A stretch of DNA of 64,000 bases from Lytechinus pictus (GCF_037042905.1 NC_087252.1:41974001-42038000); one strand, 5' to 3'; numbered from the stretch's first letter, positions 1 to 6,260 are shown. A program made the numbers and translations. The notes: generated by a model from the letters alone, not told the origin.

Positions 1-458
1 TGCCTACCATTGTTGTCTTCATCCGTTTCTTTCACAAAATATTTAAATAAAAAAGAGTTGCCAAAGCTGTTGTACACCCGACAAAGGAAATCATAAATGA
101 TTCATTTTTCATACATGTGTAAATGACCTCCATTATGATGAAATAAGTTGCGGCAATTAATAACTAATGCACTTAATCAGTTGTCAATCCAATTGTTTTA
201 GTTCTTGGTAATTTTTTGTTTAATAAACCTAATTTCATATAATAAAATACAAAAGAACAAGTGGGAATATGACATCATCAGCCCACCTAATGAATATTCA
301 TAAAGACATGCGTAGAACTGTTTCACCGGAATAATGCAAATCTTTAAAATTCAATAACTGTTATTTGTTATCCGATTTTGATCAAATTTTCAGCATTTTG
401 CTCTGTGAATTTTACTCTATTTATTGAGATATAAATATCTCCAGCCTGGACTATCCTT
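1..458. mobile_element. Right part of a TTAA-flanked non-autonomous DNA transposon (Kolobok-like MITE)
   Basis: Ends ccagcctggactatcctt-ttaa. Internal motifs (tgacatcatc, ttatccgattttgatcaaattttcagcatt) resemble the complete TTAA-flanked elements at 36217-36710 and 48228-48826. Confidence 0.5.
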
Positions 459-731
459 TTAAAAAAATAGATGAATACGTGGACAATTTTTAACCATTGC
501 AGGCGCGATCCACAGTCGGGCTTTGGGTGTGAATTGGCGCGAAAAAAAATGACAAGCAAAAAACAAAACAAATGAGATCGCAAACAGATCATTTCACGCA
601 GTCCAATCCTCCATAGGGATTCGTCAAATTCTATGCCAATAACTGACAAAGAAAAAAACTAGAATACGCATGTTCACCACCAGGAAAGGGGTGTTGGCAG
701 CCCCTCTACACCTATTTTGATATAAGGTTAC

Positions 732-836
732 CTGTTTCATAGCTGAAGTCCATCCACCGTGCCCAGACTGTAATCTCTTGACCATCTCCATATCATCATT
801 TACTCTGACAAGTTGACCAAGACAAAGTCGATGAAC
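732..836 (-). CDS. Gene A exon: second Mind bomb SH3-like (REP) repeat, VHRLCLGQLVRVNDDMEMVKRLQSGHGGWTSAMKQ
   Basis: Boundaries aattaag|GTT ... CAG|gtaacc; 105 nt, phase 0-0. The G-x-x-V-R-V ... VKRLQxGHGxW motif is typical of MIB1/MIB2 repeats. Confidence 0.88.
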
Positions 837-889
837 CTTAATTCAACAGGTAAGTCAAAGTTGAATGTGGATTAGTACCACTTCGAACT

Positions 890-998
890 ATTATGGTGAT
901 GATGATGATGACGATGATGATGGTGGTGGTGATGGTAATAGTAATGATGATGGTGGTGGTTATGGTGATAAAGATAACGATGATGATGGTGATGATGG
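890..998 (+). repeat. (GAT/GGT)n trinucleotide microsatellite
   Basis: Visible gatgatgat/ggtggtggt run. It explains the poly-Asp and poly-His ORFs in the track. Confidence 0.9.
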
Positions 999-1602
999 AC
1001 TCGTCGCTCCGGAGCTAAAGACAGTCTTCTGTTGCATCGCAAGAAACTTACGTCCAATTGCAATCCATCCCTCCATCAACTACAAATTTGCGTTGATATT
1101 AATCATAGGACTTACGTTTGATTTTTGGACTTACGCTTGATTTACAATTGATCGTAAGTTTCGATCAGTTGCCAAATGGAACCAAATGTTCAATGATTAA
1201 AGCCTACTGAACTACAGGAGGAAATAAGCAACAAATCGTCGATAGAGTGGTAAATTTCGACTGATGTCTGGGCAAAGAATATATACGATATAATTGGTTT
1301 AGCATATCATCATCGAACATGTCATTTATTCACGCTTATGATTTTTTTCAGACGTTTTACAATGAAATATGAGGGGATTCGTGGAATTTGTAATGCACCA
1401 CATATGGGAGCTGGTGCTTGCATAATGACGTCACAAATTAGTAGTTAAAAATGACTCGTATTCTTTAAATGATTTCTTCAAAACTATCACAACATTTTTC
1501 ATTTTTATTTTATTATCATTATTTTTTTTTTTTTTGGGGGGGGTATTAAAATCCATTAATCGTTATCAGGATGAACTTATTTCTGTAATTTGTGCTAATT
1601 AC

Positions 1603-1713
1603 CTTTCTTAGAGCTGCAGAATTCATGGTGAATGTTTCTTGGCTATCATGGAAAGTCACGGTGAAGTCGCCAGTATGGGTTATTCTGTTCACAAAGCCCT
1701 TCTTTCGATATGT
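1603..1713 (-). CDS. Gene A exon: C-terminal half of first Mind bomb SH3-like repeat, TYRKKGFVNRITHTGDFTVTFHDSQETFTMNSAALRK
   Basis: Boundaries ctgcaacag|ACA ... AAG|gtaatt; 111 nt, phase 0-0. Matches the MIB2-type pattern G-x-V-x-RIT-x-x-GD-x-x-V-x-F ... T-F-x-x-x-AL-x-K. Confidence 0.87.
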
Positions 1714-2538
1714 CTGTTGCAGGATAGACAAACTAACGTTTTGAATGTGACCTTACAATTTTTTGCAATTAAGTTCAAAGTTTTACTAAGTCAAGGTAAT
1801 TTCTCTGAGTTAGGACAAAAACAATCAATCATATTTTGATACAAATAATGTAACCATGATAATGCCGTTTGCGAGATGTCCACACGAAAGTGTCAGAGAT
1901 AACATTAAAATGTTACCCCTTTGGATTCATTTCCATTAAACATGTTAATGATTTATCTGGGTCCTAATGAGTTCTATTTGTAATTTCTTGTATTTCTTCA
2001 TTTATTAATCGTAAACAGTGCTGGACAGTCCTTTTGCTGGAGCAGTCACGTTTTATCTCTCGCCTAACTCGTATGTGGACTATTGTCTTCTCTTCTGTTT
2101 GTAAAGTATACATGTATGCTGATGTATATTGCTATTGAACCTGGGATGCTGAACATGTTAGAGGGTGCCATCTGATTGTCCATGTTATTTATCAATTTCA
2201 CTTTTTCTGTTTTTGTTTAGTCGTGTACATGCATTTTAGGATTAAGACGTCATAATATATTCGTTGTAACATGCAATACAAATGTATTTTTTCAACTTCA
2301 TAAGGCTTGCTTGTACTTAGATTGATTTTTTTTTCATTCATTAAAAAAAACAGCCGGAATGTGAATAACATATTCCAATTTTGTTTTTAGATGATTAATT
2401 ATTTTGAATGCTCAATATTGAACCTATTATTGTCACAGGGCTCCATGGGAGACCAACACATTGTTGAATGGGCTTCCCTGTTTTTTTAAACAAATAAATA
2501 AAAATGAAATAAATAAATCAATATCGATGTTATCTGAC

Positions 2539-2694
2539 CAGGCGCGGATTTAGCTTTTTCCGAGAGGGGGGTTTGACCAAGAAATATGAAATGCACAAAA
2601 AGGGGGTTGGCTCCAAAATGTAGGTCTTTATATTTTTTTTACCTGGCAACCAAGGGGGGGGGGGTTAACCCCCGAACCCGTAGATCCGTCACTG
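2539..2694. mobile_element. Small hAT-like MITE with 5-bp TSD
   Basis: TIRs caggcgcggatt / agatccgtcactg, flanked on both sides by ctgac. Confidence 0.65.
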
Positions 2695-2984
2695 CTGACA
2701 ATATACCTTGAGCAAATCGGCATCTACAATTCTCTTTTCCGCCGATGATAAAACGAAAATAAATGTTCTAGACAGGGAATTTGATAAATCGGTGGCAGCG
2801 GTGGGATGATTTCACTTAAATCATATAATCAGAATGTAAAGGATGGATGTTTGGCCTATGTTCATAGATAAACAGCAGTGACATAGGAGTCGGAGCATCC
2901 GAGAGACTGAATAACGATAAAAATCGGAATTGTACCATCACCACGTAAATTACAATTAAAGATGGACTAATTTCTTAAACTCAC

Positions 2985-3094
2985 GCTGGCGATCTCAGGC
3001 TTCCACAGGCCTCTGCGTTTGTGAAGTGTCTCCAATTCTGCAGGAGTCGCGGTTACCAGAACGTTGTCTCCTTCATTCAAAGCCTCCAGATCTC
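2985..3094 (-). CDS. Gene A exon: N-terminal half of first Mind bomb SH3-like repeat, (G)DLEALNEGDNVLVTATPAELETLHKRRGLWKPEIAS
   Basis: Boundaries ttgtttattttag|GAG ... AGC|gtgagt; 110 nt, phase 1-0, compatible with both neighbouring exons. GD-x-V ... L-x-x-L ... G-x-W-x-P pattern. Confidence 0.85.
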
Positions 3095-3328
3095 CTAAAA
3101 TAAACAAAGAGAAAAGCTCACTCTTTCTAACTCAGTACACTATTACACTGCAATTGATGTTTCACATACCGATATGGGAAATAGCAAAGATTGCGGAAAT
3201 GCTTTCCTTTCTATCGAGAAAGATGCTAATATGGAATGCCTTACCGAGAGTAATTCGAACTGGCGTCATGGAATTGCCACACCGCTGCTCTAAACAACCC
3301 TATTAATTCAAAATATCATCATTCTTAC

Positions 3329-3499
3329 CAAGATTCGGTAGATGCCCGTCATAAACCTGGCCGCCAGAGCCTGACAGTGTGCAGAAGATCTTAGTGATGT
3401 CTATCCAATCTGGTGAAGATGAAAACGCAACCGCTATTTGGACATTGACTCTTTCCTCAGATGTCTGTTCACGTTTAACCACTGTCCCGAGCACCTTAC
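3329..3499 (-). CDS. Gene A exon: end of divergent MIB/HERC2-like domain, (G)KVLGTVVKREQTSEERVNVQIAVAFSSSPDWIDITKIFCTLSGSGGQVYDGHLPNL(G)
   Basis: Boundaries gtcttattatag|GTA ... CTTG|gtaaga; 171 nt, phase 1-1. GGQVYDGHLPNLG matches the GG-x-x-Y-x-D-H-L-P-x-LG linker that precedes the repeats in Mind bomb proteins. Confidence 0.82.
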
Positions 3500-3664
3500 C
3501 TATAATAAGACAGAACATGCTGCATTTTACTCTACCTAAATATTTTCTTGATTATTCCTTGTTGATACAAATGCCATCTTTCTACAATCAACGCATAATG
3601 TATTTTCATGAAGTCAGAACCATCTGTTTAAAATACATTGCTGTCAGATTTTTCCATCTGTAAA

Positions 3665-3804
3665 CTCCGAACGAAACTTTGGCAAAGCAGAGAAAAATCA
3701 TCTTAGTTTAGGGAAATGAACATCATGGAATATTTAAAATGCTCTTTGCAACAAAAATTTACATCAGGTAATTTTCTGCTTAAGTTTATGTTGATTAAAA
3801 AAAC

Positions 3805-3838
<34 letters not shown>

Positions 3839-4342
3839 GTTGAAACGTCGGTATACACGAAGCCAACCGACTCGTTTACCTATCTCAATTTCAACTCGTT
3901 TCATCCTCGACACATAAAGGAGTCGATTGTATACAGCCAGCTCCTCAGATACAAACGCATCACGTCCGACCCTAAAACCTATAAAGCTGATGCCATTAAA
4001 CTTGGCAAACGTTTTATCGAACGTGATTACCCCGTTAACATGGTAAATAAGGCAATGAAAAGGGTCGAAGGAAAAAATAGAGAAGATCTACTTAATCTCC
4101 GAACGAAACTTTGGCAAAGCAGAGAAAAATCATCTTAGTTTAGGGAAATGAACATCATGGAATGTTTAAAATGCTCTTTGCAACAAAAATTTACATCAGG
4201 TAATTTTCTGCTTAAGTTTATGTTGATTAAAAAAAAAACCATATACATATATATATATATATGGGTTGAAACGTCGGTATACACGAAGCCAACCGACTCG
4301 TTTACCTATCTCAACTTCAACTCGTTTCATCCTCGACACATA
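3665..4342 (+). repeat. Tandem duplication (432-bp unit) of host flank + (TA)n + 5' end of the Penelope-like insertion
   Basis: ctccgaacgaaactttggcaaagcag... starts at 3665 and again at 4097 with near-identical sequence. Confidence 0.9.
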
Positions 4343-6260
4343 AGGCGGTGCTGCACCATCCCGAGTTTGCTCAATCTCGAGATTTTAGCCCGATCAGCCC
4401 TCTTCGCGATTAATCTCGAGATTCAAGAAACCCCGTCTGCACCATCCCACGAGGAGCTATATCTGCTCGAGCGAGGCAACAAGCCCGATATTCCGGGCAT
4501 GCGCACTTTCGGATCTTGGAGTTTCAACGGCCCGCGCTTTTGAATAACTTCCCGCGATATGCAAGCAATGAACTCCTTTCACTAGTACTTTCGCCGAATT
4601 CAACCGGTGTTATGCAACAATCCTTTCAGCTCAGCGAGTGAAGAAGTGATGTATTCTTCGTGAAATATGATGGCGGAGTAGGAGGCAACGACAGAGAGAG
4701 AGAGGGAGAAGGAGGAAAGAAATGCTATTTGCTCACATTTTGCGAAGGAATAAGACAACACTGCTGTCAGTGTTGTTATTGAATATGACCATCGTCGATG
4801 CGATGAGCGCCTCCCCCTTCGGTCTGGTCTCTCCCGGGGTCTCTCCCAAAATCCATTCACTGGTGGGGACACCATCGCATGTGTAAAGTTGACTTTCGCA
4901 CGTGTTTATGTTTTGACCAAGGCGGAAGTGGAACGCGAATTGCATTATGGACTGACGTCATGAATAAATTACCCCGAGTCCAATCTCGAGTGCGTCTGCA
5001 CCGACGAATTAGCGGGATAATTCGTAAAATAGCGCGCTATTTTGCAAATAAACCCGAGTTGACTTGGGATTGCAATCTCGAGATTAATCCTACGAACTAG
5101 CGCGATAATTGCGTCTGCACCGCCAACTATCTCGAGATTTTTCAGATCGGGATAATTTGCCGGATCAGAAATAGCGCGCTAATTTGAAACTTCGGGATGG
5201 TGCAGACGGCCCTATAAAGGAGTCGATTGTATACAGCCAGCTCCTCAGATACAAACGCATCACGTCCGACCCTAAAACCTATAAAGCTGATGCCATTAAA
5301 CTTTGCAAACGTTTTATCGAACGTGATTACCCCGTTAACATGGTAAAGAAGGCAATGAAAAGGGTCGAAGGAAAAAATAGAGAAGATCTACGTAATCCAA
5401 AAATGAAGATCAAGAATGAAGGTAGAATCCCCTTCGTTTCCACATTCCACCCACAAACTAAAAAGCTTGCCCAGACGGTTAAGAAAGAGTGGAGTGAAAT
5501 CACGGCTGACAAGCATCTCACTAAGGTCATGCCAAAGGCCCCGTTGCATGCACAGAGGCAGCCTCCCAGTCTTAAAAGGTTGATCGTGAAGAGTCGGCTA
5601 CCGGGACCCCCTCAACCAAAGGGTAACCAACCCTGTGGAAAAGCCCGTTGTCAAATATGTCCGCACATCATAACCGACAGCTCAGTACACCTCCCTACTG
5701 GTTATGCAATCAAACCTCCCAACCACAACTGTGATTCAAGCAATATTCTGTATTGCTTACTCTGTAGCAAATGCCCAGATGTAACATACATTGGAGAAAC
5801 CAGTACTAAATTTAGGACAAGATTCAATAATCACAGGTCTACTATCCGACAACACCGCGATGGTTTCCCGGTAGCTGAGCACTTCAACAGAGAAAATCAC
5901 TCTATCAGTGATCTCAAAATAGTTCTTTTCGGAGGAGGTTATAAATCCGCGGAAGAGAGGAAACTCGCGGAACTTCGAGCTATTATTAATAGCCGAAGTT
6001 TTCAATATGGCCTTAATAAGGATCTGTCTTGGCTGGAAAAATACAATTTTTACAAATAATTTCAGGATGTTTCTCATAGGTTTATCATTATTATTACTCT
6101 ACTCTCCTCCATACATATTAACAGTTGATTTCAAGATAGAGTGATTTGGGAGGTCATTGTCACCATATTTTATCGTAATTTATTTTCTTGATATAAGCCT
6201 TTATCCATTATACTCGGCAAACAAAATAATATGCGATTATGTCGTGGCTTTATTCAATAG
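3836..6260 (+). mobile_element. 5'-truncated Penelope-like retroelement (Neptune-type): RT thumb + Cys-rich linker + GIY-YIG endonuclease
   Basis: TSVYTKPTD...YL...SFHP..IK.SI.YSQ.LR thumb motif; PCGKARCQIC linker; ILYCLLCSKC...YIGET...RFNNH...VAEHF GIY-YIG in ORF 5184-6059. Inserted in (TA)n. The 3' boundary is approximate. Confidence 0.9.
4343..5213. mobile_element. Non-autonomous PIF/Harbinger-group DNA transposon inserted in the Penelope ORF
   Basis: TIRs ...ctgcaccatcccga / ttcgggatggtgcagacggccct. The empty site cacataaaggagtc is preserved in the duplicated copy at 3911-3924, implying a 2-3 bp TSD (AT/ATA). Subterminal ctcgag/gtctgcacc repeats. Confidence 0.75.

What the first reader, a model, noticed from the sequence alone, without database searches (positions are those of the whole stretch)
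732..3499. Hidden spliced gene encoding a divergent Mind bomb-like substrate-recognition module
Seen: four small minus-strand exons with canonical GT/AG ends, consecutive phases 1-1, 1-0, 0-0, 0-0 and no stops; the ORF track misses most of this. Established: Mind bomb E3 ligases bind Notch-ligand tails through MIB/HERC2 domains followed by two SH3-like repeats. Inference: the second repeat is canonical (VKRLQSGHGGW), but the first (LETLHKRRGLWKPEI) and the MIB/HERC2 part (no YR.G..G..DL) are strongly diverged. This looks like a lineage-specific paralogue with altered binding rather than the mib1/mib2 orthologue.
Basis: partly seen in the sequence, partly recalled or inferred. Interest (0 to 1): 0.7.

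Follow-up and report, generated by a model that had tools for sequence, protein, structure and literature searches.

The report
Partial copy of sea-urchin MIB2-like gene
The four exons are real, but they belong to an 8.5-kb, transposon-flanked partial copy of already annotated Lytechinus pictus "MIB2-like" genes on another chromosome; it lacks both ends of the gene and is most likely a non-functional gene fragment.

Summary
Four minus-strand exons (3499-3329, 3094-2985, 1713-1603, 836-732) have AG/GT borders and join into an open 165-codon frame. Two more exons lie left of the window, giving 253 codons.

When the exons are joined, both Mind bomb repeats pass Pfam SH3_15 (29.4 and 59.3 bits).

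The locus is not a complete hidden gene. It is an 8.5-kb block, from window 3833 to 4.7 kb left of the window. The block copies internal exons of three tandem genes on contig C18, annotated in Lytechinus pictus as "E3 ubiquitin-protein ligase MIB2-like" (913-915 aa). The fragment equals residues 174-426 and is 99% identical to copy B.

The first MIB/HERC2 exon, the ZZ exon, the exon starting the second MIB domain, all ankyrin exons and the C-terminus are absent from C8. Both breakpoints lie at interspersed repeats.

Transcript contigs show all three predicted junctions. However, they carry paralogue letters and continue into an exon that C8 lacks. Three raw RNA runs gave no reads.

The parent family is an echinoid-only, RING-less clade, separate from true MIB1 and MIB2. 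Interest is low.

The parts
3329..3499 (-). Exon e1: the C-terminal two thirds of the degenerate second MIB/HERC2-like domain (KVLGTVV...HLPNLG), equal to residues 174-230 of parent P0155.
   Evidence: AG/GT borders and open frame. 1.2-1.8% different from copies A, B and C. No Pfam hit on its own. Aligned to the parent.
2985..3094 (-). Exon e2: first half of Mind bomb repeat 1 (REP1). It carries the three C8-private base changes at 3080, 3045 and 3010.
   Evidence: Joined with e3 it scores 29.4 bits for SH3_15, E 1e-6, profile positions 2-67.
1603..1713 (-). Exon e3: second half of REP1.
   Evidence: SH3_15 E 0.006 alone. Transcript joint 1713/2985 in an X1 contig.
732..836 (-). Exon e4: first half of REP2 (VKRLQSGHGGW). 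It continues in e5 (L006:6599-6758) and e6 (L006:5888-5991), both left of the window.
   Evidence: SH3_15 E 3.7e-9 alone. Joined e4+e5 scores 59.3 bits. It aligns to human MIB1 REP in 4XI6 and 4TSE. e5 and e6 borders are.
1..3833 (-). The part of the 8.5-kb duplicated block that lies in the window. The block runs from window 3833 to L006:5318. It is collinear with C18 copies A, B and C, introns included.
   Evidence: By blastn, 3833-997 is 83-90% identical to A, B and C, and 997 to L006:5318 is 98% identical to copy B.
3834..6100 (+). Repeat-filled flank at the 5' breakpoint. It holds tandem Penelope-like fragments and a GIY-YIG ORF (5184-6059), with another interspersed repeat nested at about 4343-5214.
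   Evidence: Dozens of copies at 91-99% identity across the genome. The parents carry only a short piece of the same repeat in the e0-e1 intron.
87..466 (.). SINE-like interspersed repeat inside intron 4 of the fragment.
   Evidence: More than 40 copies at 91-94% identity on many contigs.

Best explanation
The locus is a non-processed, partial duplicate (a gene fragment) of the tandem Lytechinus pictus MIB2-like genes on contig C18. An 8.5-kb genomic block with six internal exons (e1-e6, 253 codons, introns kept) lies in a transposon-rich stretch about 0.4 Mb from the end of contig C8. Shown: the block starts about 175 bp downstream of the parental exon e0, so the second MIB-like domain loses its first two strands, and it ends about 570 bp after e6. 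It therefore has no start exon, no first MIB/HERC2 domain, no ZZ finger, no ankyrin repeats and no C-terminus. Both ends abut interspersed repeats. Inferred: repeat-mediated ectopic recombination or template switching moved the block. Its 3' two thirds are 98-100% identical to copy B, so that part was copied or converted recently. The older-looking 5' third was probably inherited from a diverged functional donor copy or allele. It is most likely not translated into a working protein. The frame is intact because the copy is young and its exons come from constrained genes. The parents would act as Mind bomb-like adaptors (MIB/ZZ plus two REP SH3-like repeats plus ankyrin) without a functional RING.
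For: The exons and frame are. Collinearity with C18 copies A, B and C, introns included, runs only from window 3833 to L006:5318. By tblastn with the parental exons, only e1-e6 are present within -20 kb to +64 kb and in a further 10 kb; there are no MIB_HERC2, ZZ or ANK exons. A genome-wide search with the 913-aa parent finds only e1, e2 and e5 on C8, and no MIB_HERC2 hit falls on C8. Exon e0 is present in A, B and C but not in C8. The fragment equals residues 174-426 of XP_063969456.1 (P0155) at 99% identity and is its sister in the tree. Both flanks are multi-copy repeats, and the left repeat ends exactly at the breakpoint. No database protein carries the C8-private residues. X1 transcript contigs read the paralogue letters at 3045, 3374 and 806 at full depth and join e1 to e0, which C8 lacks. 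Three raw RNA runs gave 0, 0 and 2 reads. In the fold model the strands encoded by e0 (model residues 13-27) precede the fragment's start at model residue 39.
Against: All 12 splice sites and all 253 codons are intact. In the older part, C8-private changes are rarer in exons (4 in 497) than in introns (102 in 2336). That could mean constraint at C8. It is equally explained by a recent copy from a functional diverged donor, and X1 transcripts that include e0 do carry some 'C8-private' letters (3080, 3010, 759). A 58-nt X1 contig matches e4 exactly, including position 759. An in-frame ATG (3518) precedes e1, although the parents share it. Expression was tested in only four runs. No DNA reads were laid, so the placement on C8 is taken from the assembly. 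There are no N gaps within 84 kb.
Confidence: 0.62

Rival explanations
1. The fragment is a functional truncated or chimeric gene. It would be transcribed from a promoter in the flanking repeats or from an unseen upstream exon, and would yield a REP-only protein of about 260-280 aa. Such a protein could compete with full-length MIB2-like proteins for their ligands.
For: The frame and splice sites are intact. Private exon changes are fewer than private intron changes. An in-frame ATG lies at 3518. Short X1 contigs match e3 and part of e4 exactly.
Against: No C8-specific haplotype appears in the transcript contigs; the C8 letters at 3045, 3374 and 806 are unseen. The contig that matches e3 continues to e0, which C8 lacks. 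No protein model carries the C8-private residues. The first domain lacks two strands. The parents share the ATG, so it is not an adaptation.
Confidence: 0.14
2. The block is an assembly artefact. In this reading, a piece of an alternative haplotype or an uncollapsed copy of the C18 array was joined into a repeat-rich part of contig C8, so the exons really belong to a full-length C18 gene.
For: Both ends of the block lie in high-copy repeats, where chimeric joins arise. The 3' part is 98-100% identical to copy B. Transcripts of another individual combine 'C8-private' letters with exon e0.
Against: There are no N gaps in 84 kb around the block. The 5' third is 8-9% diverged from all three C18 copies in its introns. 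That is more than the 0.8% seen in the 3' part, so it is not simply an allele of copy B.
Confidence: 0.15
3. One reading: a complete, unannotated lineage-specific Mind bomb paralogue whose remaining exons (ankyrin/RING or ROC-COR-death) lie left of the window.
For: The domain content of the four exons is as described, and the family is lineage-specific.
Against: The 20 kb to the left, plus a further 10 kb, contain only e5, e6 and transposon ORFs. No other match to the 913-aa parent exists on C8. Homology to the parents stops at L006:5318.
Confidence: 0.03

Closest known systems
Lytechinus pictus 'E3 ubiquitin-protein ligase MIB2-like' XP_063969456.1 (P0155, copy B on C18), with paralogues XP_063968865.1 and XP_063969358.1
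   Same: The six exons have the same borders and phases. The fragment is 99% identical in protein over residues 174-426, and the introns are collinear.
   Different: The C8 copy lacks residues 1-173 (MIB/HERC2, ZZ and the start of the second MIB domain) and residues 427-913 (ankyrin repeats, coiled coil and half-RING tail). It sits on another chromosome between transposons.
Human MIB1 MZM-REP module (PDB 4XI6, 4XI7, 4TSE)
   Same: The fragment has tandem REP (SH3_15) repeats after a MIB-type barrel. The sequence match has E 7e-20. The model of the parental segment finds 4XI6 first (Foldseek E 4e-14, 27% identity over 240 columns).
   Different: In the echinoid clade the second MIB domain has lost the QDGG loop and the YRxGxxGxxDL stretch. 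The linker to REP1 is about 17 residues shorter, and REP1 is weak (29 bits). Binding of Notch-ligand tails is not tested.
Canonical MIB2 and MIB1 orthologues (e.g. Diadema setosum MIB2-like with RING, P0163; Apostichopus P0166; fish MIB2; insect MIB1)
   Same: The overall parental architecture is the same: MIB/HERC2, ZZ, REP x2, ANK.
   Different: They form a separate, well-supported clade. The canonical proteins have two Pfam MIB_HERC2 hits and zf-C3HC4_3 RINGs. The echinoid clade has one MIB_HERC2 hit and no RING hit, and keeps only 4 of the 8 zinc ligands of the last RING.
Duplicated (non-processed) pseudogenes and gene fragments made by segmental duplication
   Same: The copy covers only part of the parent, keeps its introns, has repeats at both breakpoints, and has no start or stop of its own.
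   Different: It has no disabling mutation yet, and its identity to the parents is a mosaic (about 91% and 98-100%), which suggests later gene conversion or a mosaic donor.

Membership tests
Mind bomb family (MIB1/MIB2 architecture) | N-terminal MIB/HERC2 domain 1 | tested here: not met
   The exon is absent from C8. It is present in the C18 parents at 72 bits.
Mind bomb family (MIB1/MIB2 architecture) | ZZ zinc finger | tested here: not met
   No ZZ exon is found on C8. The parents have one (PF00569, E 6.5e-8).
Mind bomb family (MIB1/MIB2 architecture) | Second MIB/HERC2 domain | tested here: not met
   C8 encodes only the part after profile position 17 or so, because e0 is missing. Pfam finds nothing in e1 or in the whole parental domain. 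Only alignment and fold similarity remain.
Mind bomb family (MIB1/MIB2 architecture) | Two REP (SH3_15) repeats | tested here: met
   REP1 scores 29.4 bits and REP2 59.3 bits, against a cut-off of 24. The match to MIB1 structures has E 7e-20.
Mind bomb family (MIB1/MIB2 architecture) | Ankyrin repeat block | tested here: not met
   Only the first helix (e6) is present on C8, with no ANK exon nearby. The parents have the ANK block.
Mind bomb family (MIB1/MIB2 architecture) | C-terminal RING finger(s) that give E3 activity | tested here: not met
   The RING is absent from C8. The parents also give no zf-C3HC4_3 hit and keep only CGH and CPxC of the last RING.
True MIB2 (or MIB1) orthologue | Groups with canonical MIB2 or MIB1 in a tree | tested here: not met
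   It is nested in an echinoid-only clade (SH-aLRT 100) as sister to P0155. Canonical echinoderm MIB2 groups with fish MIB2 (quick search, long stem branch).
Non-processed partial duplicate (gene fragment or pseudogene) | Collinear with only part of a parent gene, introns kept, without the parent's first and last exons | tested here: met
Non-processed partial duplicate (gene fragment or pseudogene) | No transcript or product of its own | tested here: inconclusive
   No C8 haplotype is seen in X1 contigs and three raw RNA runs gave no reads. No protein carries the private residues. Only four runs were examined.
Processed (retrotransposed) pseudogene | Loss of introns, poly(A) tail | tested here: not met
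   All five introns are retained and align to the parental introns.

The most novel reading that the evidence does not exclude
The fragment is a newly born gene. In this reading it is transcribed from flanking transposon sequence and makes a REP-only decoy. The decoy would compete for the ligands of an echinoid-specific, RING-less Mind bomb-like adaptor family, giving an example of transposon-mediated exon-block dispersal that creates a dominant-negative regulator.
Probability: 0.06. Interest if true: 0.45.

Novelty: new member of a known kind. Interest (0 to 1): 0.15.

Why it matters
This mainly guards against over-reading. An intact, well-spliced set of exons that gene callers miss can be a young partial duplicate rather than a hidden gene. 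For annotation, the locus should be flagged as a fragment of the C18 MIB2-like genes.

The parent family is of modest interest. It is an echinoid-only Mind bomb offshoot, amplified in tandem. It has lost a working RING and degraded its second MIB domain while keeping the REP repeats. It may be an adaptor rather than a ligase, and it appears to be uncharacterised.

Tried and rejected
- **Pfam on single exons.** Only e4 was clear, so joined repeats were needed.
- **Upstream and downstream exons on C8.** Three searches found none: tblastn with the parental exons, Pfam MIB_HERC2 genome-wide and the 913-aa parent genome-wide.
- **A C8-derived protein model.** The members of the P0155 cluster and a region-restricted search with P0272 for proteins of 236-751 aa gave only S. 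purpuratus relatives. No protein carries the C8-private residues.
- **Raw RNA-seq.** Runs X20-X22 gave 0, 0 and 2 reads. The tool marks this as no test, because it is not shown that the organism is in those runs.
- **Copy assignment of X1 contigs.** They mix letters of several copies, through alleles, gene conversion or chimeric unitigs, so no contig can be tied to C8.
- **Exon versus intron divergence as a test of constraint.** The result is suggestive (4/497 against 102/2336), but it is confounded by a possible recent origin from a functional donor.
- **Literature search 'MIB2' plus 'sea urchin'.** Nothing was found on this clade. One hit was a metal-site server of the same name, another a heat-stress expression list.
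- **Processed pseudogene.** Rejected, because the introns are kept.
- **ROC-COR-death continuation.** Rejected, because no such exons lie to the left.

Full report
**1. Observation**

Reading the minus strand of window 1-4200 and joining the four stated exons confirms the description.
- e1 is 3499-3329, e2 3094-2985, e3 1713-1603 and e4 836-732.
- Each exon is preceded by AG and followed by GT.
- The phases are 1-1, 1-0, 0-0 and 0-0, and the joined frame of 165 codons has no stop.

Left of the window (locus L006) the frame continues through two more exons with canonical borders: e5 at L006:6599-6758 and e6 at L006:5888-5991. The total is 253 codons, ending ...ILARHPEW.

**2. Domain content**

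Exon by exon, Pfam sees SH3_15 in e4 (E 3.7e-9), weakly in e3 (E 0.006), and nothing in e1.

Joined, both repeats pass the curated cut-off of 24 bits.
- REP1 (e2+e3) scores 29.4 bits over profile positions 2-67.
- REP2 (e4+e5) scores 59.3 bits.

The two repeats match human MIB1 structures 4XI6 and 4TSE at E 7e-20.

**3. Genome context and the parent genes**

The window is G000:C8:41974001-42038000, about 0.4 Mb from the end of a 42.38-Mb contig.

DNA similarity shows three tandem relatives on contig C18, here called copies A, B and C. They match exons and introns alike.

Each C18 gene also has the following exons:
- a first exon with a clear MIB_HERC2 domain (72 bits);
- a ZZ exon;
- a small exon e0 that encodes the start of the second MIB-type domain (GAKVVRHPQWLKRQGS);
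- downstream, many ankyrin exons and a C-terminal tail.

The length of C18 (26,260,804) equals the longest contig recorded for XP_063969456.1, "E3 ubiquitin-protein ligase MIB2-like [Lytechinus pictus]". The genome is therefore L. pictus, and the parents are annotated genes of 913-915 aa. P0155 is copy B, P0266 is copy A and P0268 is copy C.

**4. The C8 locus is only a piece**

Collinearity with the parents runs from window 3833 to L006:5318, about 8.5 kb, and stops at both ends.
- tblastn with every parental exon finds e1-e6 and nothing else in 84 kb around the locus plus a further 10 kb.
- The 913-aa parent searched against the whole genome hits C8 only at e1, e2 and e5.
- No MIB_HERC2 hit falls on C8.
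- Exon e0 lies about 175-200 bp upstream of the point where homology begins, and it is absent from C8.

The fragment equals residues 174-426 of P0155 with three amino-acid differences.

A model of the parental segment 136-430 has mean pLDDT 76.5. It places two strands (model residues 13-27, encoded by e0) before the point where the C8 fragment starts, at model residue 39. The C8-encoded first domain is therefore incomplete. The model's best structural matches are MIB1 MZM-REP entries.

**5. Breakpoints**

The right flank, from window 3834 onward, consists of Penelope-like fragments, a GIY-YIG ORF and a nested repeat. All are present in dozens of copies at 91-99% identity. The parents carry only a short piece of the same repeat in the e0-e1 intron.

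The left flank is another multi-copy element. Its terminal 231 bp are 99-100% identical to other copies, and it ends exactly at the breakpoint. Further left lie LINE-type ORFs.

No N gap occurs in the 84 kb examined. Repeat-mediated ectopic recombination or template switching is the inferred mechanism.

**6. Age and constraint**

The block is a mosaic.
- From window 997 leftward it differs from copy B by about 0.8%, and e6 is identical.
- From 3833 to 997 its introns differ from A, B and C by 5-11%, while its exons differ by 1-4.5%.

C8-private changes number 4 in 497 exon bases against 102 in 2336 intron bases.

Taken alone, this would suggest constraint. It is equally expected if the block was copied recently from a diverged but functional donor copy or allele. 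Transcript contigs of another individual support that reading: they carry some "C8-private" letters in molecules that also contain e0.

**7. RNA**

Run X1 (Logan contigs) shows all three predicted junctions: 1713/2985, about 3092/3328 and 834/1601, all CT..AC on the plus strand. The family's exon structure is therefore right.

None of the transcript evidence can be assigned to C8.
- The 791-nt contig reads the paralogue letters at 3045 and 3374.
- It has nine differences in e1.
- It continues upstream into e0-like sequence that C8 lacks.
- At position 806 all contigs read the letter of copies A and B.

Three raw RNA-seq runs, with about 12.9 million reads sampled from each, gave 0, 0 and 2 reads. 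This is not a valid negative, because it is not shown that the organism is in those runs.

No database protein has the C8-private residues (DLEAL, KRRGLW).

**8. Family placement**

In a tree of 26 proteins the fragment is sister to P0155. It lies inside an echinoid-only clade (Lytechinus, Strongylocentrotus, Diadema; SH-aLRT 100). Canonical echinoderm MIB2 groups with fish and insect MIB2, and MIB1 forms its own clade (quick search, long stem).

The echinoid clade departs from canonical Mind bomb proteins in several ways.
- It has one Pfam MIB_HERC2 hit, whereas the canonical proteins have two.
- Its second MIB domain lacks the QDGG loop and has the YRxGxxGxxDL stretch deleted.
- The linker to REP1 is shorter.
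- It gives no RING hit.
- Its tail keeps only CGH and CPxC of the last RING.

**9. Verdict**

The most likely reading, at about 0.62, is a young, transposon-flanked partial duplicate with no product of its own.

The rivals are:
- a truncated or chimeric expressed gene (about 0.14);
- a misplaced haplotype piece (about 0.15);

Literature searches gave nothing on this clade.

Noticed in passing
G000:C18:21837601-21946654 (loci L007-L015), proteins P0155, P0266, P0268: The parent MIB2-like genes form a tandem array of three near-identical copies about 40 kb apart, with two more distant relatives further along C18. Pfam finds no RING in them. The C-terminus keeps only CGH and CPNC of the last Mind bomb RING, and this is conserved in S. 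purpuratus and L. variegatus. The family may be a pseudo-ligase or adaptor.
   Followed up: partly
protein P0272 (XP_054774017.1, older L. pictus annotation): This 429-aa model has the full N-terminus and then ends three residues after e6, at the same point where the C8 block ends. It may reflect a truncated copy or a chimeric join in an earlier assembly.
   Followed up: no
window 870-1020: A (CAT)n-type microsatellite in intron 3 gives long His- or Asp-rich open frames on both strands. The copies differ in its length, and one X1 contig skips it.
   Followed up: no
window 87-466: A SINE-like element of about 380 bp is present in more than 40 scored copies at 91-94% identity. A partial inverted copy often lies next to it.
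   Followed up: no
window 3716-6059: Two tandem Penelope-like fragments are followed by a 291-aa ORF with a GIY-YIG-type motif, interrupted by a younger repeat (up to 99% identical to a copy on C3).
   Followed up: partly
L004/L006, window coordinates -13347 to -7269: A large non-LTR retrotransposon ORF (1269 aa, endonuclease and reverse transcriptase) is followed by a 579-aa ORF and a 295-aa ORF with PHD-like cysteine patterns.
   Followed up: no
G000:C14 (several loci) and protein P0278: The genome holds at least 14 MIB_HERC2-bearing loci. One MIB2-like protein, conserved in L. variegatus, has a protein kinase domain.
   Followed up: no
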